Source of the DNA: Anthoceros angustus
Lineage: Eukaryota > Plantae > Anthocerotophyta
Direction: 5' to 3'
Length of the DNA: 64,000 nucleotides
NCBI GenBank assembly: GCA_010909165.1
Contig: MU008209.1
Span: forward strand, 262,109-326,108
Made by a program: the position numbers and the translations under genes. The notes beneath the pieces are model-generated. The model did no database searches and was not told the origin of the DNA. It saw only the letters and a list, made by a program, of their open reading frames with translations. This document shows positions 29,966-51,300 of this stretch, piece by piece. Within the stretch, counting starts at the first letter, position 1. Every line of letters begins with the position of its first letter.

Positions 29966-30036
29966 CAGGATGAGAATCAATTCATGGAAGCTAGATTGTT
30001 ATTCGCGTAGATGTCAGCTGCCAGTGGTTGCGAGCT

Positions 30037-32640
30037 ATGGCTGTCTGGAGCGTTGCAATTGAGACAGGCAAAGGGCAACTGGACCCGTTGTGGGCACGGT
30101 CCTCGTGGACCCAACAAAGTGGTGGGCTGCCAGCTGCCGGACGTCTAACTTCAAGAAACCAGGACTTGGCAAACAACGAACCTCCGATGTGCAGCACCTT
30201 TAGAAACTCACCCAGTCCAGTAGTATGTCGGGCTGGAGACAGAACCTCCATCGACCAAGAGCTTGATGCGCTGGATACGAAGATCGGTCGTCGCAGGCAT
30301 TCAGGGTACGAAAGGAGTGTAACGGCTGAGACCGTGATCAAGTTATGTCGTCAAGGCCATCTCTCTGAGGCTGTTAACGCTTTGGAAGTTCTGGTAGAGA
30401 CAGACTGTCGTGTCTCCAGGCCCCTCTTTTACACTGTGCTGAAGGAATGTGTGGTGAAGAAGGATGTTCGTCTAGGTAGCCGAGTCCATGCTTTCACGGC
30501 AAAGATGGGTTACGAGTCAGATACGTTCCTGTGCAATTACATTCTGCGAATGTATGCCTCTCATGGCAGGCTGCAAGACGCGGTGGATGTGTTTGAAGCC
30601 GTTGCAAAACCAGATGCCTTCATGTGGTCTTCCATAATTTTTGCACATGTTAAACACGGACAAGACAGGCAGGCCCTACAACTGTATAATCGGATGCGCA
30701 AGTCCAGTGTGAAGCCAGACGGCCATGTATTTGTGGCAGCCCTTCAGGCTTGTGCAAGGGGGCAAGACTTGAAAACTGGGCAGGAGCTACATGCTGCTGT
30801 GTTAGCTTGTGGCGTTGAGCCGAATGTGTTTGTCTCTAGTTGCTTGGTGGACATGTATGCAAAGTGTGGCAGCTTAGAAGACGCTCAAAGAGTGTTTGAC
30901 GCACTTGGCCAAAAGAATGTGGTCACGTGGACTGCTCTAATAGCAGGATATTACCAGCAGGGCAATGGGCAGGAAGCTCTTCGTCTCTTCAGGGAAATGG
31001 AAGCAGAAGGCATCGCTGTACCCAATTCGGTGACATTTGTGTGCCTCCTGCAGGCATGTGCAAGTGTGGGCACTCCAGCTTTGGAGATGGGGAAGCAGAT
31101 TCATGTGCAGATCAGAGAACGAGGCCATCAAGATGATGTGTTTGTAGCCAACAGTTTGGTGAACATGTATGCAAAGTGTGGCAGCTTGGAGGATGCTCAG
31201 GGAGTGTTTGACGGACTTGATCGGAAAGATGTGGTGACATGGAATGCCCTGATGGTAGGATATACCAAGCAGAGCATGGGCCATGAAGCCCTTCGTCTCT
31301 ATCGAGCTATGCAGAAAGAAGGCTTGGTTGCACCCAATTGCCCGACATTCGCATGCCTCCTGCAGGCATGCGCAGGTGTGGGCACTTCAGCTTTGGAGGT
31401 GGGGAAGCAGCTTGACAAGCATATTAGAGAACAAGGACATCAAGATGATGTGGTTCTAGCCAACAGTTTGGTGAACATGTATGCTAAGTGTGGCAGCTTG
31501 GAAGACGCTCAGAGGGTGTTTGATGGACTGGATCAAAAGAACGTTGTGACGTGGAATGCCATGATAGCAGGATACTCTCAGCAGGGCATGGGGCAGGAAG
31601 CCCTTCGACTTTACATAGCCATGGAACAAGAGGGCATCACTGTACCTGATGCCGTGACATTTGTCTGCCTCCTTCAGGCATGTGCAAATGTGGCAGCTTT
31701 GCATCTGGGAAGGCAGCTGCATGCACAGATTGAAGAGCAAGGGCTTCAAGCTGATGTGTTTGTAGCCAGCAGTTTGGTGAACATGTATGGAAAATCTGGG
31801 AGCATGGTTGATGCACGACAGGTGTTCGATGAATTGCCTGAACGAGGCATTGTTTCCTGGAGTGCACTGATTGCAGGCTACTCCTGCCAGGGAGACAGTG
31901 AAGTGGTCTTCGACCTGGTGCAGAGAATGACAGAGGACGGCATTCAGCCAGACAGCATCACTTTCCTCAGCATACTAACGGTCTGCAGCCACGCAAGTCT
32001 AGTGGACAAGGGGAGTGAGTACTTCCAGGCTATGAGCAGGAACTACGGAATCTCACCCACAGTAGAGCACTACACATGCATGGTGGATCTCCTGGGCCGT
32101 GCAGGCCTACTCAATGAGGCATTATCTGTGGTAAGAACAATGCCTGTCCCGCCCAATGCTGCTGTGTGGCACACTCTGCTGGGTGCTTGTAGAAAGTGGA
32201 GCAACGTCGAAGTAGGACGTCACGCTTTCGACCAAGCAGTGAAGCTAGACAATAGAGATGCTGCAGCATATGTGTTGATGTCCAACATATACAGGAGTGC
32301 AGAGATGTGGGATCAGGCAGGCGAGATACGGTCGAGGAGGACAAGCATCAGGACATGGAAGCAGCGAGCTCAGAGCTGGTGGACAGACATGGCTGGACTG
32401 GTGCATAGTTTTCTGGCTGCGGATGAAAAGCATCCCAAGAATCAAGCCAGGCTGAAACACATGTTTTCCAAATTGAAGAATGAAGAATATGCAGACTCTT
32501 CACCGACAGACTTCTCTGTTGATATAAAGCAAAATGGTTTGCATGGGCACAGCGAGCAGCTGGCTATGTTACCTTCCCTCAACGACAAACCCCATATTCC
32601 TTGTGAAAGATACACCTTGAGACATTGTTTGATCTCTTGA
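30037..32640 (+). CDS. Intronless PLS-class pentatricopeptide repeat protein with E1/E2 and a truncated WW-type DYW domain (candidate organellar RNA-editing factor)
   Basis: Repeated P-L-S triplets (LVNMYAKCGSLEDAQRVFD, VVTWNAMIAGY, VTFVCLLQACA), HYTCMVDLLGRAG, WHTLLGAC and AYVLMSNIY, followed by AQSWW and HSEQLA. There is no CxxC or terminal DYW. Confidence 0.92.
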   Translation: MAVWSVAIETGKGQLDPLWARSSWTQQSGGLPAAGRLTSRNQDLANNEPPMCSTFRNSPSPVVCRAGDRTSIDQELDALDTKIGRRRHSGYERSVTAETVIKLCRQGHLSEAVNALEVLVETDCRVSRPLFYTVLKECVVKKDVRLGSRVHAFTAKMGYESDTFLCNYILRMYASHGRLQDAVDVFEAVAKPDAFMWSSIIFAHVKHGQDRQALQLYNRMRKSSVKPDGHVFVAALQACARGQDLKTGQELHAAVLACGVEPNVFVSSCLVDMYAKCGSLEDAQRVFDALGQKNVVTWTALIAGYYQQGNGQEALRLFREMEAEGIAVPNSVTFVCLLQACASVGTPALEMGKQIHVQIRERGHQDDVFVANSLVNMYAKCGSLEDAQGVFDGLDRKDVVTWNALMVGYTKQSMGHEALRLYRAMQKEGLVAPNCPTFACLLQACAGVGTSALEVGKQLDKHIREQGHQDDVVLANSLVNMYAKCGSLEDAQRVFDGLDQKNVVTWNAMIAGYSQQGMGQEALRLYIAMEQEGITVPDAVTFVCLLQACANVAALHLGRQLHAQIEEQGLQADVFVASSLVNMYGKSGSMVDARQVFDELPERGIVSWSALIAGYSCQGDSEVVFDLVQRMTEDGIQPDSITFLSILTVCSHASLVDKGSEYFQAMSRNYGISPTVEHYTCMVDLLGRAGLLNEALSVVRTMPVPPNAAVWHTLLGACRKWSNVEVGRHAFDQAVKLDNRDAAAYVLMSNIYRSAEMWDQAGEIRSRRTSIRTWKQRAQSWWTDMAGLVHSFLAADEKHPKNQARLKHMFSKLKNEEYADSSPTDFSVDIKQNGLHGHSEQLAMLPSLNDKPHIPCERYTLRHCLIS

Positions 32641-35900: not shown

Positions 35901-36437
35901 GAAGGAACAGGGACAAGAGTTGTGGGTCGACCTACCTACACTACTATTGCTCTAGGCGTTGGGAGGCAAGGAAGGACGCTAAGACCTTCATGCCGTGATG
36001 GGGACTTTCGTGTTGGAGCAGGTTGAGATTGCAGGACCATTATCCCAGCTGGATTCGGAGTATCCAGACCTCACAATAGGTCGGTGGCTGCTATGCTTCG
36101 TTTGAGTAAAAAGCGGAAGAGCAAGCTTTTGTGCTTGTAAATCAAGCATTTAATCTCATATCGAAAACCGGTGTGTAGGCTGCTACAGGGAATCGGCTCG
36201 CTCAGAGGCAGTGAAGGGCAACTGGAACGTGGGAAGGCTTGTGTTGAGTATTATCGGCAAGGTCGGTAACCGGGTTTTCTCCCTTCATGGGCCAAGTGCT
36301 GTTTCTAATCGTTCCGCGGTTTTGGACTGATGCTTTGCTCTGTGGTTTTGCAGAGTGCTCCGAGGGTGACAAGTGCAGCCAAGGCTCTGGAGGCCGCGTT
36401 CGCGCCTGGCGATGTTGTGGAGCTCAGGGATGAGTGA
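32942..36437 (+). CDS. Bifunctional-type FAD synthase (PAPS-reductase-fold FMN adenylyltransferase plus C-terminal molybdopterin-binding/CinA-like domain), multi-exon
   Basis: [19 protein letters not shown]…[12 protein letters not shown]|[43 protein letters not shown]; then [20 protein letters not shown] and MAKLPEG. Stop at 36435-36437. Confidence 0.88.
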
Positions 36438-36896
36438 CGTGGCACACATCAGAGACGCGGCTGCTGGGTTGTTCGCGGGAGCGACGAGCTTTTATATTAT
36501 TATTACTACTGCTGCCGACGCTGTCGCATTCGGTCGGAGGGTGACTCGCAGAGCTCATCTTTGGATGCTCTTTTGGTGATCACTAGTAGTGCGTCACTCC
36601 CATAGATGATGCTATATACACGTCGCGAGCATTATTAACAACCGGCTGAGCTTTGTTGATTCATACAATTCCTCCGGCTGTAGCCGACTATTCCCTCTGC
36701 ATGCGCGGCACGCACTTCGTACCTTTTGCAGGTCCGTCACATTGAGAGTGAGGCCAGGATGCAAATTATGGAGGCTTCCCATTTCCATGTGCATCCCCAG
36801 ACGATGCTCTGCATGTACACGAGAGAGATCATTGGCTCAAGCTGAAGACCCGGTGTTGCCGGGTGTGTTCTACCTACTGCGAATGTGCATGGAGTC

Positions 36897-39800
36897 TCAG
36901 AAAACATCACTGAAGGTTTGGGCAGCACTAGCAGGTGGCGGGGTTTGGGAGGCTTGGGCGATCTTGTCCCAGCCCAGGTCGAAGGTGTCGTCACCGTGGG
37001 CACCATCATCTGCATGGGCACGGGCATCCAGATGGGAGGCGACGGGGGCCTCGAGGGACGGCGGATTCCTGCACCGGATGAGCGGCCAGTTGAAGCCCTG
37101 GAAGAAGGGGTGCTGCTTGATGTCGTTGGCGCCGCGGAAGGCCCCCAGGCGCCGCGCCGGGTCCCGGTGCAGCAGCGCGCCGATGAGCTGACGCGCCGGG
37201 AGCGAGACGGGAATGCTAGCCGGAAAAGTGAGCTCCTGCTGCAGGACGTTGACGAAGGTGAGGTGACGGTTCCGGCCGCGGAAGGGAGTGCGGCCGTACA
37301 GCATCTCGTAGAGCAGGATGCCGAGCGCCCACCAGTCGACGGCGCTGGTGTGGCCCTCCCCATTGATCACCTCCGGCGCGATGTACTCCTCGGTGCCGAC
37401 GAAGGAGTTGGAGGCGGCGCTGGGCTGTGCGCAGAAGACGGGCTGCTGCTGCTCGCGCCGCCGCTTGCGCCGCCGCATCGGGCCGACATGGCTCTGCAGG
37501 AGCTGCGGGCGCGAGGAGGTGAGGAAGGAGAGGTCGAAGTCGGTAAGCAGAATGTGGCCGTTGTCCTGGAGCAGCACGTTCTCGGGCTTGAGGTCCCGGT
37601 AGATGACGCCCATGTAGTGCAGATACTCCAGGGCGATCACCACCTCGGCGGCGTAGAACCGGGCCGCGTCCTCGCTGAAAATCTTACGCGGCTGCTCCTC
37701 CTGGAGCACAAATAGCTCCCCGCCGGGGCAGAAGTCCGTGATGAGGCACACGTGCGTGCGCGTCTGGAAGCTGGCGTAGAGCGTGGGCAGAAAGGGGTGG
37801 TCCACCATGGCCAGGATGCTGCGCTCCGCGCGCGCCCGGTGCACCTTGTTGCGCCGCACCATGGCGCCCTTGTCCATGGCCTTCATGGCGAACACATGGC
37901 CCGTGCCCCGCAGCTCCACCAGGTACACGGACCCCGTGTCCCCGCGGCCCAGCGGCCTGAGCGGCCGGAAGTCCTTCAGGCCCAGCCCCTGCCCCTGCCC
38001 CCGCCGCTGCACCCTCCCGATGGCGTGCCACTGCGCGCTGTTGAGCTTGTGCGGCCGCGCAGTCACGGGCCCCGAGTGCGCCACCCACAGCGCGTCCGGG
38101 GTCTGGTCCGCGTCCGGCAGCTGCCGCGTCGCCCTGTCCACGGTCTTGGCCGTCGTCTTGTTGCTCTTCACCAGCAAATGCTGTGCTGCTGCTGCTCCTC
38201 CTCCTCCTGCTGCTGCTTCAACTTCCCCCTCCTGCTCTGCATCGACGGCGGCAGGGGCAGGGGCGAGGGCGGGAATCTTCTTCCTCGCCTTTGCAGACGA
38301 ACCCCTGTCCTTGCTGGGAACATAGTCCGCCACCTTCTGCTGCACGCCGATGAAGTACTGTAGCGCCCCGCTCTCCGGGTCGCGCATGGCCTGCAGGTGG
38401 AACAGGTTCCAGAACGCCTGCCCGCCCTTGGTGTAGTTCACCATCTCCAGGGTCAGGTCACGGGCGTCGCGCACTGCGTCCCGGATCTTCTTCACGCTGG
38501 CCGGGTCCGTGTCCGGGCCCTGCAAGAAGCGGCAGTTCCGGCCCAGAACCTCCTCCCGGGTGTACTCCGTCAGGTCCAAGAAGCGGTCGGAGGCGAAGAT
38601 GATGGGGTTGTCGTCAAGCCGGGGGTCCGTGATGACGAAGCTGTCGTCGATGCGCTCCAGCGTGGTGGCCAGATCCACTCCCCGCCGCGTCCGCTCCGGC
38701 AACCGGACGCGGTCGATCCTCCGTCGTCCTCCACCATAACCACCTCCAGCTCGGGGTACGCGGACTCCTGCGCAGCCGCCGCCACTGCCGCCGCCACGTC
38801 CTCCAGCAGCAGCGGCTTCCTCTCCTGCTCCGAGATCGCGGACCCGCTCGTCGCCAGCCCGCTGCTGCTGTTGCTCCCGCTCGACAACCCGGGCACCAGC
38901 TTCGTCCTCGGCTCAGACGCCAGCGACAGATTCGACATGGACACGAACCCGGGGCCGAGCAGCGGGGGCGGCTGCTCCAACACCTGCCTGGGCCGCGCCA
39001 CGGCCGCCACCAAATCCCCCACCAGCCCCTTGGCCTTCTCCTCCTGCCGCGCGTCGTACCGGATGAGCGACTGCGGGAGCCCCTTGGGCCGCACCGCGTC
39101 CGCCATCGCCCCCTCCGTGTGCTTGCTCACTTCCGCCTGCATCCCCACGAAATGCGTCGTCGCCCCGGCATCGTCCTTCACCGCCGTGATGGTCAGCAGG
39201 TTCCAGAAGGTGGACCCGTCCTTCTTGTAGTTGAGAATCCTGCCGCAGAACCTCCCGCTCCCGCCATCCCCCAGCGCGGCCCGAATCTGCTCCACCTGCC
39301 CCGGGTCCGTGTCCGGGCCCTGCAGGAAGCGGGGATTCGCTCCCAGCACCTCCTTCGTCCCGTACCCCGTCATGGCGAAGAACCCCGCGCTGGCGAAGAT
39401 GATGGGGTAATCCGGCTTCCCGGCGTCGCACACCAAGAACGCGAGCGGGAACGACCCCAGCGCGTCCTTCACCTCCCGGCTCATCCCGCTAACGCCATCG
39501 CTCCCCTCCGAGCTCCGCATCGCCTCCATCCACTCACGCGCCAAACTGCACGGCATGGACAGCGACGGGCCATTACCCCCGGGCCCGCCACCGCCAGGCA
39601 CGGGCAGGGACAGCGACATGACGCGCGACATGGACGTACTCGTCTTCACGCCGGAGCTCCCGCTGCCTTCGTCGTTCGCCTCCTCCTCCCGCTGCAAGAT
39701 GAGGTGCAGGGAATGGATGGCGTCCCGGTCCACCTCCTCCCACGCCGAGCTCCGCCCCTTGATGTACTCCGCGAACGCCAGGAAGGAAGAGCGCGGGTGA

Positions 39801-41415
39801 AGCCTGCTCCCGTCATCGCCTTCCTCCGCGCTGTGCCGCGCCCCGGCCCAGCTCCGCTCCCGGGGCTCCTGCGACCGGAACCAGAACACGAAGGAGCCGG
39901 CCGGCGAGATCCTGGCCGCGGCCATCCCGGCTACGGCGTCCCCGAGCGCGGCTGCTCCGGGGTACCCAGACTCCGTGAGGGAGTCGGACACGAAATCCAC
40001 CACATCCTTGTCCTGCCGCAGCAGCCATCCCGCCATCTCCCGGATCTGCGCCTCAGTCGGCGTGGTGCCGAGCATCCAAATCCGCTTCCCGTAGTAGAGC
40101 GCGGCGCCGGAACAGTCCACCAGATCCATCACCGTCGGCGCCTGCACCACCACTCCCACCGGGAGCTCCCGCAGCAGCATGTCGCAGAGCAGCCCCTCGT
40201 TCCTCTGCACCCGCTCCTGCCGCACCTGCTCCGCGTAGTCCATCTCGCGGTTCAGCTGCGCCGCGAAGGCCTGCACCAGGGACTCGCAGGCCTTCCGGAG
40301 CGGGAAGGGGAGGGTGCGCGGAGTGGTGTGGTGGCACACCACCAGCCCCCACAGCCTCCGGCTCCCGCTCAGCTCCTCCTCCGCGTCGCGGGTCACCACC
40401 GCCAGGGCCAGCGATGCCACGGACCCCATGTTGGCCATGTACTGGGCGTGGCAGGCGTGCGGGGAGCGCAGGCTGGACCCGGCCAGACTGATGGGCTGAT
40501 GCAGCTCCCGGGACTGCACCACCCGTACCGGGGTGGAGACGCAGTCGGCGATCATCCGCACTCGCTCCTTCATGAACAGGAACCTGGACGCCTGGGGCAC
40601 GTCCGTGGCCGGGTAGTGCAGCCCGATGTACGGCTCCAGGTCCGCGCGCAACCTCTCCGCCACCACCTCCCCGTGCTCGTCCTCGTGGAACTTGTACGCC
40701 ATCACCCGATCGTACCCCGTGAGATCCCGCACCTCCTCCACCACCAGGTCCAGCAGCGTCCGCAGGTCTCCCCGCACCGGCAAGGCCTGCACCCGCGCGA
40801 TGGCCGCCCTCGCCGCGCCCGCCGACACGAACATGTCCGTGGCCTCCGCTGGCTCCAGATCCACCACCAGGCCCCCGATCTCGTCGTTCGCCCGCAGCAT
40901 CGCGTACAAGGGAACCCCGCTCTTGCTGTTCACCGCCAGCGGATTCAGGATCCCCGGATCCTCCGCCTCCGCCGCCTTCTCCACCACCGCCACGCTGCTC
41001 TCCGCCAGAAGCTCCCGCGCGTCCGTCCCGATCCCGACCTCCTGCACATTCTTCCCGCCCTTGAGCCCTAGCACTTCCGCCGCGTTCTCGCTGTACGCCA
41101 TCACCCGGAAGCTCTCCTCCTCCACCGCCAGCATGCACCCGAACGACTGCGTCACTCCCCCGCGCTGCATCGCGCGGAGGTACGCCGTCACCGCCTCGCT
41201 CGGCAGCTCCACCCCTCCGCCTCCGCCCCCGCCAGAGCCGCCATCCCCGCTGCCTTGGGGTACCGGTTGGATCCCCCCTCGTACGCCGCGTGCAGTCTGG
41301 CATCCGCGCTCGTCTGCGCCACCCGCACCCCGTGCCGGGACTTGCTGCTGCTCGCAGCTCCTGCTCCGCCCGAGCCCGAGCCCGAGCTCGAGCTGGGCCG
41401 CGGAGAGCGCAACAT
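36897..41415 (-). CDS. NEO: Neochrome: intronless phytochrome (PAS-GAF-PHY)-phototropin (LOV1-LOV2-AGC Ser/Thr kinase) chimeric photoreceptor; two apparent frameshifts in this assembly
   Basis: Phytochrome part: VAQTSADARLHAAYE, TAYLRAMQRGG, GYDRVMAYKFHEDEHGEVVAE, HYPATDVPQASRFLF, LRSPHACHAQYMANMG (bilin Cys 40451-40453), LHPRSSF. LOV1: GANPRFLQG. LOV2: DLATTLERI…GRNCRFLQG. Kinase: GRGDTGSV, YRDLKPEN, DFDLS, SNSFVGTEEYIAPE. Encoded in three overlapping ORFs (41188-41415, 38570-41212, 36897-38702). Confidence 0.96.
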
Positions 41416-41580
41416 CTTGTCTTGTTGTTCAAAACCTTATCCTCCTCGAGCTCCTCCCTCCGAATGCACAAACACAACTCCCTGCTGCAGAGAATGGAAT
41501 GCCTCTGCTGCAAATCAGCGATCAAATCCTCCTCCTGCCAAATCTTGAGCGTGACACATCGAGCAACAGGAACATCTTCT

Positions 41581-41602
41581 GAGGAAGAAGAAGAAGAAGA
41601 AG
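41581..41602. repeat. (GAA)n / (TTC)n microsatellite in the neochrome 5' region
   Basis: gaggaagaagaagaagaagaag. Confidence 0.8.
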
Positions 41603-42015
41603 AGACAGCAGTCGAAGCCAGCAAGAAGCAGCGGGAATGCAACAAATGGCGCTTTATAATGCAAGAGGAGCTGAGGAAGGCGGCCATAGCCAGGGCGGTG
41701 CGAGGAGCATGTGGCGAGCACTTATCTGCGCAGAAAGCGCGCCGCGTGCTACCTCAAATTAGGCCTAATTAAAGGCCAAGCACATGAGCCAGCGGCGCCG
41801 CCATGAGCCCTTGCCAGAGGCAAGCGCGGGGACCCGATCCGCGGTACCGGAGATCTCGATCTCCCGCCTCACGCGTCCGCGCGGGTTTAATCCCCGCCGG
41901 CCCCGGCAGCTGAGCACCATTCGTGCACCAGATCTGCAGCTGCTCCTCCTCCTGGGGATGGCCGGCTGTCGCTGGCGGCTTCACTACATCCTGCAAAGTG
42001 CACAGAGCGGGCGTC

Positions 42016-43317
42016 ATGTACAGCAGCAAAGGAGAGCGAGAGCCCGAGGGCGAGGGCCAGGGCCAGGGCGAGTCCCTGTTCGTGTTCATGGCGGACGAGC
42101 TCGAGGGCGGGCAGCAGCAAGACCAGCAAGACAGCAGCCAGTGGATGGATCCGGAGCTGTGGAGCAGGCTGCCGGAGGATGTGATCGCCTTGGTGCTGAT
42201 GAAGCTCCCCGTGCTGAGCCACTTCAGATTCATGTGCGTGTGCAGGAGGTGGCGCGTGATGCTCTCGGACACCGGCTTCGCCAAGCTCTGCTGCGCCGCG
42301 GTGGAGCAGCCGACGGCCTCGGGGCCGCCGTCCTGCCTGTGCGGGATGGCCTCCGGATCCAGCCCGCCTGCGGCTGAGATCAAGATCCCGGGGTCCAGCC
42401 TCCGGCCTCACCGATTCCACCGCTCCTCGCTCCCCGCGGATCCGGCCGACGCCGCGAGCCAGCTTGATCTCTGGGCCTCCGACCGGGGCCTGCTCTGCTT
42501 CAGCAAGCGGAAGCAGCCGTACGGCGAGGCGCATCTCTACATCTGCAATCCTGTGACCCGGAGCTGGAAGAAGCTGCCTCCCGCCAGATTCGACCAGTTC
42601 GAGTCCCCGCACCGCGCCTTCTTGCAGGTCCTGGATCCCGGCCATGCTGCGGCTGCGGCTAAGTACGAGGTGGTGCTGCTGGCCAAGACGCTCGCCGGCG
42701 GATGCTGTGTCTTCGTCTACGCGGCCGGAGCTCGGCGATGGCGGAGGCTGGAGTGGGAGGAGATCTCGGTTCCTGCATCCGGCGCCTTCGATCCCGTGCT
42801 CTGTAACGGCGTGCTGCATGTCCTCGGATGCTCTTCCGGATCCGATCCGTTCAAGCGCGCGCTCAGCTCCTTCTGCGTGCGCAGCAAGCGGGAGGTGGCC
42901 GTGCCGGCTCCTCCCGCGGCCCGGTGCCGGAAGCTGGTGGAGCACCACGGATGCCTCTTCATTGTCTCCTTCTTGGAGCCGTTCGCGGGCCTGTCGGTGT
43001 GGAAGCTGGAGGATGCGGATCCGGAGAAGAAGCTCGCAGCCGCCGTGTGGACGCACGTCTCCACCTGCAGTGTGCAGAAATTCGCGCAGCTCACCGGCTC
43101 CTGCAAGCCGCCTCTGCTCGCCAAGGTCGGGGCTATAGGAGGATTCATCTGCCTCTGCATAGACAACAAAACCGGGAGCTCCGCGTTGCAGCACACTCTG
43201 GCTTTGTGCACCCGGGACAACAGCTGGTGCGTATGGGACTTTGGAATTGCGGATCCCCGCCGTTCCAAGCTGCTCCCGTTTCAGCCAACACTTACGACTT
43301 CTGTGACAACGCCATAG
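42016..43317 (+). CDS. Intronless F-box protein with a beta-propeller/kelch-like C-terminus (start 42016 or 42088)
   Basis: F-box MDPELWSRLPEDVIALVLMKLPVLSHFRFMCVCRRWR, plus ASDRGLLCF, YICNPVTRSWKKLP and C-terminal PFQPTL. These motifs are typical of plant F-box/kelch-like proteins. Confidence 0.88.
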   Translation: MYSSKGEREPEGEGQGQGESLFVFMADELEGGQQQDQQDSSQWMDPELWSRLPEDVIALVLMKLPVLSHFRFMCVCRRWRVMLSDTGFAKLCCAAVEQPTASGPPSCLCGMASGSSPPAAEIKIPGSSLRPHRFHRSSLPADPADAASQLDLWASDRGLLCFSKRKQPYGEAHLYICNPVTRSWKKLPPARFDQFESPHRAFLQVLDPGHAAAAAKYEVVLLAKTLAGGCCVFVYAAGARRWRRLEWEEISVPASGAFDPVLCNGVLHVLGCSSGSDPFKRALSSFCVRSKREVAVPAPPAARCRKLVEHHGCLFIVSFLEPFAGLSVWKLEDADPEKKLAAAVWTHVSTCSVQKFAQLTGSCKPPLLAKVGAIGGFICLCIDNKTGSSALQHTLALCTRDNSWCVWDFGIADPRRSKLLPFQPTLTTSVTTP

Positions 43318-43442
43318 CTCATGAGCTCGAGCTCACAACAGAGACTTCTAAGACTTGCAATCTACATCCAAGACTAAGTGTCATCTAGAACAGCAAAGCC
43401 TTACAGTTTTCTCTTTGAGTAGCTTCTTCTCGTCTGTGACAT

Positions 43443-43508
43443 AGTCCTTAGAACCTGTTCCTCTGTGCATGTCTCTGTGCATGTCCTTAGAACCTGTTCC
43501 TCTGTGTG
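43443..43508. repeat. Short direct repeat GTCCTTAGAACCTGTTCCTCTGTG x2
   Basis: Directly visible; a related copy lies near 43615-43640. Confidence 0.7.
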
Positions 43509-44701
43509 TCTTTCATGTTTGCTCCCTTGCGCTGCATCCAGCGTTGTACAAGAGAGTTTTCTGTTTCTGCACCTACATAGATAGCATCGTCTTCTGATGT
43601 GTGAGACAAAGCCCTTAGAAGTTGAACCTGTTCTTCTGTGTCCGCGCAATATCTTTCATTTCATGTCTTGTCCTATGGATGATGTACCAAGTACCTTCCG
43701 TGTCATCAGTCCGTGTATGTACATCTATGTGCACTGTACACTGTACAGCCAGCATCGAAGTGGCCTAACCTAAAACTGAGAACGCTTGGGGGTTTGGGAA
43801 GAGAGAGGCTCGGAGACCGAGCCTCGCCAGGCCTCGCCTCGCCTCGCATTTTGGTGAGCCGAAATGGAATAAGTTAATTGGGGAAAGGAAAATGCGAGTG
43901 CAGCACGGGGAGAGGAAGATTCTGGATCTGCCATGTTCCTCTTGGACGAGCCGGGGCGGGACGGGGCTCCATAGCCAGCGGCATCGTCCCTCTCGCCCCC
44001 TCCGCCCCGGCGGGATTTGCCCTTACTGTCCTGGAGATGCTCTGCGCACAGGCCACGGCAGCCCGTGCGCGTGGGCCTCTTCAATGCTGCTGAGTGATTG
44101 CTCGCAGGCGTGCGGGTTAGGGCGGCACGGCGCGTAGCTGCTCGGGCCTGCACAGCACGCACACCTGGGATTGTGGAGGACGGTACATGCGAGAGCGCAC
44201 TCGCTGTTGAGCTGCGGAATCCAGCACCGGATTGCGGTCCTTGTTTGATGCTGGATTGTCTCGGGGCAATCGTGGTGATCGTCTCCAGGAGCTTCAGTCG
44301 CACAGGCTGAAGCTAGGGCTGTGGCATGTGGTTTAGGAAGCACACGCTTGCGCGCTCTCTCATCTGCGGATCGCCTCTGCGGCAAGGTGAGGTTTGGGCG
44401 TGCTGCCATCGACTGCGGCCGAGCTGGAATCCAGCTCCAAGTTTTTTGACACGTTTCGGGGAATTGCGCAGGGGTTTGGCGACGCGCGCTGTAAAGAAGT
44501 TGCAGCCGGAGACTTCGGCAAAAAGGGAGCTCATGTCACAGCTTGTCTGGCACAGATGTAAGTGTTTAGATCTTTGAGATTTCGGAGTTTGTTAGGAGGA
44601 GAAGACAAATCTTTGTGTTGCGACGAGCTGGGACTGCAATTTGACGGCGGGCCACGCTCGTCTGCAGGTTGCTTTCAGCTCCTGAAGCGGGAAAAGGGAA
44701 A

Positions 44702-48355: not shown

Positions 48356-51300
48356 CTAATTTGTCGACCAATCGGAATCGTAACCAAGACGTTGTGATTT
48401 ACATTGAGAGCTACTACTACTTGAGGAGGAATTTTGTGTCTTCTCCCTCTGCACCACAGGACTTGGCCCCATAAATATGGCAGACAATTTCACCTTTGGC
48501 GAGGATAATCTATCTTGTGTGCTTGGCGATGATGGCATGTTTTTTGGTGATGTTACATTGGATCCTCTTGGACTCATAGTTCCATCACTACGTTTGGAAT
48601 TTATCCTCAATAAAATGTCTTGCTTTTTCCTGCTATCAAGCTCTTCTAGTTTGGCATTTGCTACAGCCAACATATTAAGCCTTGGTACTCTACTTTTAGT
48701 GGATGATGATTGTGGAGTTTGTTGTTTTTGTTGATTTGGCAATATTTTCCTTTTCTCATATTTTGGTGATTTCTGCCCTTGATTAATCTGTAATCTAACA
48801 GACTCAAACATGGACAGAAATTGTCTTAATGTCTTGAATATCTCAATTGTCTTTTCTTGCTTTGGAACTTCCCCGAAGAATAGGGCTATATTATTAATTT
48901 TTTCAAGGACATTATGCAATAAAACCTCTAGCCCACAAATATTTTCATGAGTTTGCTCAGCAAACAAGGTCATTTTTTGAGTGAAGTTAATTTCAAAATC
49001 TGATTGATTTGTGCATTGTTTAATTTCTTCATTCACGGTGGTAAGACCTCGTTTGAGGTCATGTAACTTTTCTTGTACATCCCCTATATTTATGCTGGAT
49101 GCTTGCTTTACATCTTCAAAATCATGAGCTAATTTTCCAATCTGCATATAATGATCAATTTTAATCTATTGTTTTAATTTATTTTCTTACTCTATAAATA
49201 AATAACACCTAATGTGTCTCACCTCTGTGTCCTTTTTCAATAGCTCGGACACCACAAAGTGGAGAAGAGTAGTGTTGGTATTTTTCCCCTTTATATCCAT
49301 AAGCTTTAGTAAAGCATCTAATTTGAATCCACTTGCACATCCACGAAAGGATCCACCATTTAGATGGTTACCCACAACTAATACCATCTTCAAGATCTTC
49401 ACAAACTTTTTGCTACTTTTTAACTCAATACATGATTTCTCCAATATAGTAAGATCGTATTTAATCTGTTTCATGAATATCACCATAATTGATTATATTA
49501 ATTTCAATATTAAAATAGATATCCCTAAACATAATATATCCAAGAAAATTACAGATAGAACCCTACTTGTTCAATGGTTCTATTACATTGTGTTTTAAAC
49601 AACAATGCTATACTCTTATTTTTAAACCGTGGTATTTTCATCAACTCCATATAGTATCTAAAGAGCACGATTAAAGCAACAAGTCATAAAGCTATGTAGA
49701 TCATGTTGAAAATTTACAGCCATCCTTTTGAAGCATAAAGTGTTAAAAATTAATTCCTTACTTCTCAATTTCCGAGAGCTGAGATACGTCATCATTGTAA
49801 TCTTTCAATAGTTTCACATCCTCTTCACTAGGCATAGTACGACTCATTAGCTGAAGTACCTCATCGGTAAGCACAAGTTCATCCAACTCCAATAAAGCTT
49901 TGCAAAGTTCTGAGAGTGGCTTTCTTAAACTCATAAGTTGGATGCTCACATTATGTGCATGTTTTAAATCAATCACTCGAATTGGCTGAGCTCTTTTTGT
50001 CTTCGCTACTTCCTACAATTTGCATTCCGTGTTCTTTGCATTTATTTGTGTATACTTGCATGAGTTTCAAAATTCTAGAAAGTAGAAGAAACAATAGACC
50101 AACTTTCACATATCTATGTTTCTCTCTTACTATGTTCCTTGGTTTTGTGATTGTGATTGTGGGTGTGGATATAGCAAATAATAACTCAAGATTACTTGTG
50201 TCAAGTGTAACCTCTTCCAAGTGTGTGTCTTCCCATATTGTTTCTCTAGTTCTAGCTAAAGAAAGTTTATTCCAAATAAGAGGCTTCATTTTAGGTTTCT
50301 CCTCAATATTTTCATCCCCTATTTTGTTTTCAGGAGGTTTTAGGGGGCAAAGCTTTTTGGGAATCGATTTTAAGAGTGGTGGAGGTGGTGGAGGTGGCGG
50401 AGGTGGTGGAGGCGGCGGAGGTGGTGGAGGAGGTGGAGGTGGTGGAGGTGTAGCTGGTACAAGAGAGAGTGAAGCTCGTGGAGGGGAGGAGGTGGAGGCG
50501 GAGGTGGAGGCGGAGGTGGAGGTGGAGGTGGAGGCGGAGGTGGAGGAGGTGGAGGCAAGTCTAGATCTAGAAGAGTTGACGATGGCGAGAAAATCTTTTG
50601 CTCTTCTTCCTTGTAATCATCTATGTCAAGACAACATTGTTTTCCCTTAGCATGCAATGTTTTAGCTTCGGTGTAATTATTGAAAAATTGTTGATTTTCT
50701 ATAATAGTAGTAGATTGTTGGACACAAACATTGCATGGAAAGTTCTCATTGATAGTAAATACATTCCGAGATTTTGACATACTTTGGTCCATTGTAGGAC
50801 AATTAATTTCAATGTCATAGATATTTGACTCAAGGGCTTCACGCATTATTGGTTTGGATGGAGTTGAATCTCTTAATTCTTTAGCAAGAATGGATAGATC
50901 CTCATCGAAAGTTAAGGATGAAGTAGGGATCCCAAAAGATGATAACCAAAGTGTCTTTTTTGAAACAAAATCTAATTTTTCTTTGTCATTTTTCTCTAGG
51001 CTGCTTATATTTGTTTCACATGATGGATTCTCAAATGTTTTAGGATTAAAATGCATAATATTGGACTCTAGTGATTGGAATGAAGACAATAGAGAAGTTC
51101 TTTGTGATTCATAACATAAACTTTCCGACACTAAAGCTGATTCTGCAACCATGTGAGACTCATTGTTTATATGAGATGGAGATGTGTGAGTTGAGTTCGC
51201 ATTGCTCATATTCTCCCCATGATCTTGATGATTCATATTCTGTACGTTGTATGAATTTGCATTGCACATATTCTCCTGATATTCTTGATGATGCATACTT

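What the first reader, a model, noticed from the sequence alone, without database searches (positions are those of the whole stretch)
39320..39352. Neochrome LOV1 lacks its photoactive cysteine (GANPRFLQG instead of GxNCRFLQG)
The codon at 39332-39334 is CCC (Pro) where LOV domains have the Cys that forms the FMN C4a adduct. LOV2 keeps NCRFLQ (38532-38534). TGC to CCC needs two substitutions and preserves the frame, so it is unlike the indel errors seen elsewhere in the window. Inference: LOV1 is photochemically silent and possibly a structural relay, so blue-light input would come only from LOV2 while red light enters via the PHY module. That would be a rewired photoreceptor architecture.
Basis: partly seen in the sequence, partly recalled or inferred. 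Interest (0 to 1): 0.8.

Follow-up and report, generated by a model that had tools for sequence, protein, structure and literature searches.

The report
Neochrome LOV1 without its photoactive cysteine
A hornwort's red-plus-blue light receptor gene (neochrome) really has proline where the first of its two blue-light (LOV) domains normally has the light-reactive cysteine; its closest known relative shares the change, but it is a modest variation, because that first domain is the dispensable one and has lost this cysteine in several other plants.

Summary
On the minus strand, codon 39334-39332 is CCC, giving G-A-N-P-R-F-L-Q-G in LOV1. LOV2 keeps TGC at 38534-38532.

The proline is not an assembly slip. 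P0001, an independent 1350-aa neochrome (about 93-96% identical across domains), has the same motif. Sixteen other neochromes (four other hornwort genera, the rest fern or unlabelled) and three hornwort phototropins all keep Cys. The change therefore arose once, on the long branch leading to this lineage, probably Anthoceros.

The polar flavin-contact residues expected from solved LOV domains are kept, and the domain models as a LOV1 fold. My best reading is that LOV1 still holds FMN but cannot form the cysteinyl adduct, so blue-light gating of the kinase rests on LOV2.

- LOV2 is already the main switch in phototropins.
- Algal neochromes are published as lacking the LOV2 Cys.
- Natural Cys-to-Pro LOV domains are known (the archaeal BAT protein).
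- I found independent LOV1 Cys losses in Ipomoea, Castanea, Hamamelis, Carpinus and a phototropin-like protein from environmental assemblies, while LOV2 Cys was 210/210.

Caveats: the gene carries two 1-nt frame breaks in this assembly. The scan had already noted this codon from an overlapping window.

The parts
36897..41415 (-). Whole intronless neochrome gene: ATG at 41415, stop at 36897-36899. It reads in three frame pieces in this assembly.
   Evidence: It is colinear with the 1350-aa neochrome P0001 over all domains, and its C-terminus ends like hornwort phototropin.
41212..41415 (-). N-terminal extension of the phytochrome module (M-L-R-S-P... to ...A-G-A-E-A-E-G)
   Evidence: Frame 0 translation. 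It matches the P0001 N-terminus (GGSNRYPKAAGMAALAGAE).
41211..41216 (-). Frame break 1: one base short, at a run of four G (41215-41212), between the N-terminal extension and the PAS2 domain
   Evidence: The two reading frames share base 41212. P0001 reads through without a break.
39695..41182 (-). Phytochrome photosensory module PAS_2-GAF-PHY, with the bilin-binding Cys motif (H-A-C-H-A-Q-Y-M-A-N-M-G-S) intact
   Evidence: Pfam PAS_2 2.4e-24, GAF 2.6e-18, PHY 5.3e-45. Motif read in the translation. 96.1% identical to P0001.
39098..39460 (-). LOV1 domain (121 aa used for all LOV1 analyses)
   Evidence: Pfam PAS_9 2.8e-13. phmmer E 3.4e-44 to Arabidopsis phot1 LOV1, 2z6c. AlphaFold2 pLDDT 81; best PDB match 2z6d_A, TM 0.84-0.86, rmsd 1.2 A.
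39332..39334 (-). [quoted passage not shown]
   Evidence: Aligned to Cys of 2z6c and 2z6d. Shared with P0001 only; Cys in 16 other neochromes.
39428..39430 (-). TGC = lineage-specific Cys in strand A-beta (F-L-V-C-D), at the position of AsLOV2 T418 / VVD C76 / YtvA T30
   Evidence: sequence. Spacing of 31 residues to the adduct site, as in AsLOV2. Other LOV1 domains have S, V or A here. The equivalence T418 = C76 = T30 is stated in PMC4161478.
38717..38725 (-). Frame break 2: one base short in GAC GAC GG^AGG ATC, in the LOV1-LOV2 linker
   Evidence: The frames share base 38720. P0001 reads E-D-D-G-R-I-E-R through this site.
38340..38645 (-). LOV2 domain, canonical
   Evidence: Pfam PAS_9 2.6e-16. 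96.1% identical to P0001.
38532..38534 (-). TGC = adduct-forming Cys of LOV2 (G-R-N-C-R-F-L-Q-G)
   Evidence: This column is Cys in 210 of 210 sequences.

Best explanation
This is a genuine, lineage-specific Cys-to-Pro replacement at the flavin-adduct position of LOV1, in the neochrome of an early-branching (most likely Anthoceros-type) hornwort. The gene is otherwise a complete neochrome: phytochrome PAS2-GAF-PHY with its bilin Cys, LOV1, canonical LOV2, and an AGC kinase. LOV1 keeps the LOV fold and the polar flavin contacts, so it most likely still binds FMN. It cannot form the Cys-C4a adduct. Blue-light control of the kinase therefore rests on LOV2 alone, red/far-red input comes through the phytochrome module, and LOV1 persists as a non-photocycling structural or modulatory domain. 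What is shown: the codon, its presence in one independent relative, its absence from all other neochromes sampled, retention of the flavin-contact residues, and the predicted fold. What is inferred: FMN binding, absence of any photoreaction, the role of LOV1, and that the two 1-nt frame breaks are homopolymer errors of the assembly rather than real lesions.
For: - Codon and motif.
- Domain architecture.
- P0001 (UniParc UPI00045ECABD) has the same GANPRFLQG and reads through both frame-break sites.
- Sixteen other neochromes (Megaceros, Nothoceros, Paraphymatoceros, Phaeomegaceros, the rest fern or unlabelled) and 3 hornwort phototropins have NCRFLQG in LOV1.
- In a quick ML tree of the phototropin module, window+P0001 (SH-aLRT 100) are sister to all other hornwort and fern neochromes inside a neochrome clade (99). 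Cys is therefore ancestral and was lost once, on a long stem of 0.63.
- N42, R44, F45, L46, Q47, N77, N87 and Q108 are invariant in the 21-sequence LOV1 alignment, the window included. R60 is near-invariant and kept (aligned to solved LOV1).
- AlphaFold2 LOV1 has pLDDT 81 and matches phot2 LOV1 2z6d at TM 0.84-0.86, rmsd 1.2 A.
- Identity between the window and P0001 is high in folded domains (PHY 96.1, LOV1 92.7, LOV2 96.1, kinase 98.2%) and lower in linkers (82-90%). That is the pattern of purifying selection, not decay.
- There are no in-frame stops in about 1500 codons.
- Both frame breaks are single missing bases at short runs.
- Pro at this position is compatible with flavin binding in BAT-LOV (PMC4682037).
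- Pro was the commonest non-Cys residue at this position among 148 representative LOV proteins: 4 Pro against 212 Cys.
- The kinase is regulated mainly by LOV2 in phototropin (PMC4401697, abstract).
Against:
- Only one independent relative carries the Pro, and my tools give it no organism label.
- The gene has two frame breaks in this assembly, which could be real.
- LOV1 of this lineage differs at 10 of 63 columns that are at least 95% conserved in 208 other LOV1 domains, against 0-3 in other neochromes. This could mean wider loss of function, including flavin binding.
- AlphaFold2 has no cofactor and says nothing about the pocket.
- A nearby lineage-specific Cys (39430-39428) is unexplained.
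Confidence: 0.6

Rival explanations
1. The gene is a pseudogene in this genome. The two frame breaks are real, and the Pro is part of a decaying LOV1.
For: Two 1-nt frame breaks at 41212 and 38720. There is an excess of changes at conserved LOV1 columns. No listed holder is on record as RNA; X5, a run of the same sample guessed to be RNA, holds 8% of the sampled words.
Against: P0001 has the same Pro in an unbroken frame, so the Pro predates any break. There are no stop codons in about 1500 codons. Domains are 96-98% identical to P0001 while linkers are 82-90%. Both breaks are one-base shortfalls at runs, as long-read assemblies produce. The sample's best DNA run holds only 80% of the sampled words of this GC-rich stretch.
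Confidence: 0.15
2. LOV1 has lost flavin binding altogether and is only a spacer or dimerisation scaffold between the phytochrome module and LOV2.
For: 10 of 63 highly conserved LOV1 columns are changed, including the Q-Q-T motif before A-beta, the Pro in H-beta and a Lys in I-beta. Algal neochrome LOV domains without the Cys have also lost flavin contacts (PMC4532919).
Against: All polar flavin contacts are retained here, unlike the algal case. LOV1 is 92.7% conserved between the two species. BAT-LOV, which has Pro, binds flavin.
Confidence: 0.15
3. LOV1 is still a sensor but of a different kind. It would respond to light or redox through flavin reduction to the neutral semiquinone, as engineered and natural Cys-less LOV domains do, possibly helped by the new Cys in A-beta.
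For: Cys-less VVD and YF1 signal through the semiquinone, and natural Pro-type BAT-LOV changes conformation on reduction (PMC4682037). The conserved Gln (Q108) and the other contacts are kept. A lineage-specific Cys sits at the VVD C76-equivalent position near the flavin.
Against: Wild-type BAT-LOV photoreduces very poorly. Nothing here tests photochemistry. The A-beta position is naturally variable (S/V/A/T), so the Cys may be neutral.
Confidence: 0.08
4. The CCC codon is a sequencing or assembly error, and the real codon is Cys.
For: The assembly shows indel problems in this very gene.
Against: It would need two substitutions, not an indel. P0001, an independent sequence, has Pro at the same site.
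Confidence: 0.02

Closest known systems
Hornwort/fern neochrome (Adiantum PHY3/NEO1 type; Li et al. 2014, as cited in PMC4532919 and PMC10030945)
   Same: Same PAS2-GAF-PHY-LOV1-LOV2-Ser/Thr kinase architecture. It is colinear with a neochrome protein and therefore intronless, and its phototropin module falls in the neochrome clade.
   Different: All 16 other members sampled keep Cys in LOV1; this lineage has Pro. It sits on a long branch (stem 0.63) and is only about 53-57% identical to the others.
Zygnematalean (Mougeotia-type) neochromes lacking the LOV2 cysteine (PMC4532919)
   Same: A neochrome in which one LOV domain has naturally lost the adduct Cys.
   Different: In the algae it is LOV2 that lacks the Cys, several flavin contacts are also lost, and the protein is reported not to respond to blue light. 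Here it is LOV1, the contacts are kept and LOV2 is canonical. The algal fusion is of independent origin.
Natural Cys-less LOV domains, especially BAT-LOV of haloarchaea with Pro at the adduct site (Yee et al. 2015, PMC4682037)
   Same: All conserved LOV residues are present except the Cys, which is replaced by Pro.
   Different: BAT-LOV is an archaeal domain in a transcription regulator. The three characterised natural Cys-less LOV domains named in the 2026 preprint are all prokaryotic. This one sits in a plant phototropin-type kinase, next to a canonical LOV2.
Phototropin LOV1 (Arabidopsis phot1/phot2 LOV1, 2z6c/2z6d)
   Same: 57-59% identical over the aligned stretch, with the same fold.
   Different: Pro replaces the Cys, and the Q-Q-T motif before A-beta is changed to P-L-A.

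Membership tests
Neochrome (hornwort/fern type) | N-terminal phytochrome photosensory module PAS2-GAF-PHY with the bilin-binding Cys | tested here: met
   Pfam hits. The motif H-A-C-H-A-Q-Y-M-A-N-M-G-S was read in the translation.
Neochrome (hornwort/fern type) | Fused in one gene to a complete phototropin part: LOV1, LOV2 and an AGC Ser/Thr kinase, with no histidine-kinase-related domain | tested here: met
   In this assembly the frame is interrupted twice by one missing base.
Neochrome (hornwort/fern type) | Phototropin module groups with the hornwort and fern neochromes, not with phototropins | tested here: met
   Quick ML tree: neochrome clade SH-aLRT 99, window+P0001 100. The careful search did not finish.
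Canonical photocycling LOV domain (for LOV1) | PAS/LOV fold | tested here: met
   AlphaFold2 pLDDT 81. Foldseek 2z6d_A: E 8.6e-15, TM 0.84-0.86.
Canonical photocycling LOV domain (for LOV1) | Polar flavin-contact residues (Asn, Arg and Gln of N-C-R-F-L-Q, the F-alpha Arg, two beta-sheet Asn, the I-beta Gln) | tested here: met
   N42, R44, Q47, R60, N77, N87, Q108 are kept. That these are the contact residues is my recollection of solved LOV structures, not a tool result; PMC4532919 cites Crosson and Moffat 2001 for them.
Canonical photocycling LOV domain (for LOV1) | Adduct-forming Cys in G-x-N-C-R-F-L-Q-G | tested here: not met
   Pro (CCC 39334-39332). LOV2 meets this feature.
Canonical photocycling LOV domain (for LOV1) | Binds FMN and shows the 447-to-390 nm photocycle | not testable with these tools
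   Needs protein expression and spectroscopy.
Natural Cys-less LOV domain (Yee et al. 2015) | All strictly conserved LOV residues present except the adduct Cys | tested here: met
   The definition is in PMC4682037.
Natural Cys-less LOV domain (Yee et al. 2015) | Binds flavin and responds to photoreduction or chemical reduction | not testable with these tools
   Shown only for BAT-LOV and a few prokaryotic domains.

The most novel reading that the evidence does not exclude
LOV1 of this hornwort neochrome is not a dead domain. It would be a flavin-binding, adduct-free sensor or tuner that reacts through the neutral semiquinone or the redox state, perhaps using the new A-beta Cys as electron donor. 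Alternatively it could act as a permanently 'dark' LOV1 that resets the sensitivity of the LOV2-kinase switch. It would be the first natural Cys-less LOV domain with an intact pocket in a plant phototropin-type kinase, probably in the same genus as a species used for hornwort laboratory work.
Probability: 0.15. Interest if true: 0.6.

Novelty: new variant of a known kind. Interest (0 to 1): 0.38.

Why it matters
[quoted passage not shown] Anyone dissecting it in an Anthoceros species should know that its LOV1 cannot do adduct chemistry, unlike the fern protein used as the reference.

The case also gives a natural experiment on what LOV1 is for. In my sample the adduct Cys was lost in LOV1 in several independent lineages but never in LOV2. 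That fits the view that LOV1 photochemistry is dispensable.

A plant LOV domain with Pro at the adduct site and an intact pocket would also be a ready candidate for work on Cys-less LOV photochemistry. So far that work has used only prokaryotic natural examples.

Tried and rejected
- **Read check.** There is no read-level evidence.
- **Exact look-ups.** The look-up of encoding contigs for P0001 and for the 880-aa ORF found nothing on record.
- **Search for short fragments.** A third homologue search with a 271-aa LOV1 piece, meant to catch short fragments from relatives' read assemblies, found only phototropin fragments of other plants.
- **LOV1 homodimer with FMN (complex prediction).** No verdict, score 0.02. 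This is no evidence either way.
- **AlphaFold2 dip.** Confidence dips around residues 41-50 of LOV1. The Cys-containing Megaceros LOV1 control shows the same dip (69 against 67) and also no helix there, so the dip says nothing about the Pro.
- **Relative-rate test.** Tajima tests against a hornwort phototropin outgroup show this lineage faster in both LOV1 and LOV2, but not significantly (p 0.07-0.44). There is no LOV1-specific overall acceleration.
- **RNA editing.** Rejected as a way to restore Cys. C-to-U edits of CCC give Ser, Leu or Phe codons, never Cys. P0001 also carries Pro, though I do not know whether it came from cDNA or genomic DNA.
- **Neighbouring PPR gene.** I looked at it for a second homopolymer frameshift, as a test of assembly quality. 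Its C-terminal tail is degenerate and the test was inconclusive.
- **Literature.** Li et al. 2014 and Suetsugu et al. 2005 are not held. No held text mentions the hornwort LOV1 Cys. Figure 5 of PMC4532919 aligns LOV1 of selected neochromes and might show it, but figures are not held.
- **Joined gene model.** It was never sent to a search tool. Pieces were searched by reference only. The joined form, with X at both breaks, was used only in local alignments and the tree.
Full report
**What is in the sequence.** The finding lies in a minus-strand gene. Read 5' to 3' on that strand, 39352-39320 is GAG GTG CTG GGA GCG AAT CCC CGC TTC CTG CAG, that is E-V-L-G-A-N-P-R-F-L-Q, with the Gly codon GGC following at 39319-39317. 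CCC is at 39334-39332. The second LOV motif reads G-R-N-C-R-F-L-Q-G, with TGC at 38534-38532.

Pfam finds PAS_2, GAF, PHY and one LOV-type PAS domain in the ORF 38570-41212. It finds a second LOV-type PAS domain and a protein kinase in the ORF 36897-38702. This is a neochrome.

**Two frame breaks.** The gene is not one open frame in this assembly. The N-terminal extension starts at ATG 41415 and is in one frame. The stretch from PAS2 to the LOV1-LOV2 linker is in a second frame, and the rest is in a third.
- At each junction the two frames share one base (41212 and 38720), so exactly one base is missing.
- Break 1 is at a run of four G (41215-41212).
- Break 2 is in GAC GAC GG^AGG ATC.

**Is the proline real?** I could not check reads.

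Independent support comes from the protein databases. P0001 is a 1350-aa neochrome (UniParc UPI00045ECABD; no organism label available to me). It is 91% identical over the LOV1 region searched (92.7% over the 110-residue LOV1 segment) and has the same G-A-N-P-R-F-L-Q-G. It also reads straight through both break sites (A-G-A-E-E-D-E-Q-L-E-L-P-S-E and E-D-D-G-R-I-E-R).

A two-substitution change shared with an independent sequence is not an assembly error. No further relatives were found:
- no other close relative appeared in three word-index searches;
- none appeared in the exhaustive representative search;
- exact look-ups found nothing.

**How the change is distributed.** I collected 16 other neochromes: Megaceros, Nothoceros, Paraphymatoceros, a partial Phaeomegaceros, nine named ferns and three unlabelled. 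I added three hornwort phototropins. All have N-C-R-F-L-Q-G in both LOV domains.

In a quick maximum-likelihood tree of the phototropin module, the neochromes form a clade (SH-aLRT 99). Window+P0001 (100) are sister to all other hornwort and fern neochromes, on a long stem of 0.63 against 0.22. The careful search did not finish. With phototropins as outgroup, Cys is ancestral and was lost once on this branch.

The position matches an early-diverging hornwort family. Earlier notes of the scan call the genome a hornwort, and I take it to be Anthoceros-like. That is an inference.

**State of LOV1.**
- In a 21-sequence LOV1 alignment, N42, R44, F45, L46, Q47, I59, N77, N87 and Q108 are invariant, the window included. 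R60 is near-invariant and kept. These include the polar flavin contacts as I know them from solved LOV structures. The alignment to Arabidopsis phot1 and phot2 LOV1 is gapless across the active site.
- AlphaFold2 gives a confident LOV fold (pLDDT 81). Its best PDB match is phot2 LOV1, 2z6d (TM 0.84-0.86, rmsd 1.2 A).
- A dip in confidence around the motif also occurs in a Cys-containing control, Megaceros LOV1. It therefore says nothing about the proline.
- Between the window and P0001, identity is 96.1% in PAS-GAF-PHY, 92.7% in LOV1, 96.1% in LOV2 and 98.2% in the kinase, but 82-90% in the linkers. LOV1 behaves like a constrained domain.
- It is nevertheless unusually derived. Of 63 columns that are at least 95% conserved in 208 other LOV1 domains, it differs at 10 (P0001 at 9), against 0-3 in every other neochrome. 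In LOV2 the figures are 5 of 70 against 1-5.
- Tajima relative-rate tests show no significant LOV1-specific acceleration.

**How it most likely works.** By the established LOV mechanism, no thiol at this position means no C4a adduct. I therefore read LOV1 as a flavin-binding but non-photocycling domain. LOV2 is the only adduct-forming blue-light switch, and the phytochrome module is the red/far-red input.

Pro is compatible with flavin binding. The archaeal BAT-LOV domain has Pro at this site, binds FAD, FMN or riboflavin, photoreduces poorly, and changes conformation on chemical reduction (PMC4682037). Cys-less LOV proteins can signal through the neutral semiquinone, so 'silent' is not proven.

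The lineage also has a Cys of its own in strand A-beta (F-L-V-C-D, 39430-39428), where other LOV1 domains have S, V or A. By spacing this is the AsLOV2 T418 / VVD C76 / YtvA T30 position. The three residues are named as equivalent, and VVD C76 as a proposed water access point, in PMC4161478. I cannot say whether this Cys matters.

A test of LOV1 self-association gave no verdict.

**Pseudogene or assembly error.** Points in favour of assembly error:
- Both breaks are single missing bases at short runs.
- The region is 60-69% G+C against 37-53% around it.
- The best DNA run of the source sample holds only 80% of the sampled words here.
- An earlier follow-up in this genome reports another gene cut by a frameshift that its relatives lack.

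With the conservation pattern and the absence of stops, I put assembly error at about 0.7-0.8 and a real pseudogene at about 0.15. Either way the Pro predates the breaks, because P0001 has it in an intact frame.

**Comparison with what is known.**
- Algal neochromes without the LOV2 Cys, and with eroded flavin contacts, are published. They are discussed as red-only receptors (PMC4532919).
- Natural Cys-less LOV domains number about 70, with Ala, His or Pro at the site. The three characterised ones named in the 2026 preprint are prokaryotic.
- Among 148 representative LOV proteins nearest to this LOV1, I counted Cys 212 times and Pro 4 times at the motif. One of the four is a 702-aa LOV-LOV-kinase protein from environmental assemblies.
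- Among 210 paired LOV1/LOV2 sequences, LOV2 was Cys in all 210. LOV1 was Ser in four angiosperm phot1 proteins.
- Within clusters the Ser is species-specific. Ipomoea nil, I. indica and I. hederacea have Ser, against Cys in I. triloba, I. batatas and I. trifida. Castanea mollissima, C. sativa and C. crenata have Ser, against Cys in C. dentata, C. pumila, Quercus and Lithocarpus.

Loss of the LOV1 Cys is therefore recurrent in this family. It fits the accepted view that LOV2 mainly controls the kinase (PMC4401697).

**Novelty.** I found no statement of the hornwort LOV1 change in any held text. Figure 5 of PMC4532919 might display it, but I cannot see figures. The scan itself had noted the same codon from an overlapping window.

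**Verdict.** This is a new variant of known kinds: a neochrome, and a Cys-less LOV domain. It is of moderate interest, mainly for people who will work on hornwort neochrome and on LOV1 function.

**Procedural note.** The joined gene model was never sent to a search tool. Pieces were searched by reference, and the joined form with X at both breaks was used only in local alignments and the tree.

Noticed in passing
window 41211-41216 and 38717-38725 (minus strand): The neochrome gene has two one-base shortfalls at short runs, which split it into three frames. The nearest relative, P0001, reads through both. They are probably long-read homopolymer errors in a GC-rich stretch, but this was not checked against reads.
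   Followed up: partly
P0019, P0428, P0429, P0432, P0433 (Ipomoea); P0033, P0438, P0440, P0444, P0445, P0447, P0449 (Castanea); P0088 (Hamamelis); P0091 (Carpinus): Angiosperm phot1 LOV1 has Ser instead of the adduct Cys (N-S-R-F-L-Q-G), seen in both genome annotations and transcriptomes. It is species-specific within genera: close relatives such as Ipomoea triloba, I. batatas, Castanea dentata and Quercus keep Cys. LOV2 Cys was kept in all 210 sequences examined.
   Followed up: partly
P0365 and P0426 (702-706 aa, from environmental assemblies, contigs up to 44 kb): A phototropin-like LOV-LOV-kinase protein with Pro at the LOV1 adduct site (G-H-N-P-R-I-I-Q-G) and a degenerate LOV2 motif (G-Q-S-P-L-F-I-M). 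It is a second Pro-type LOV1 in the phototropin family, of unknown organism.
   Followed up: partly
window 39428-39430 (minus strand): A lineage-specific Cys in strand A-beta of LOV1 (F-L-V-C-D), shared with P0001. It sits at the position of AsLOV2 T418 / VVD C76, which PMC4161478 describes as a proposed water access point. Other LOV1 domains have S, V or A there.
   Followed up: partly
window 36000-44000: A GC-rich island (60-69% G+C) holds the neochrome gene and the neighbouring F-box gene. The flanks are 37-53% G+C.
   Followed up: no
window 41923-43317 (+): A 464-aa open frame with an F-box and a KIB1-4-type beta-propeller lies next to the neochrome gene, in divergent orientation.
   Followed up: no
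window 30028-32640 (+): An intronless 870-aa PPR protein with an E motif. Its C-terminal tail resembles a degenerate, truncated DYW-type extension. I could not tell whether this is real or another frame problem.
   Followed up: partly
window 48356-49147 (-): An exon-sized ORF matches the end of a formin FH2 domain. It lies in an AT-rich stretch (33-37% G+C).
   Followed up: no
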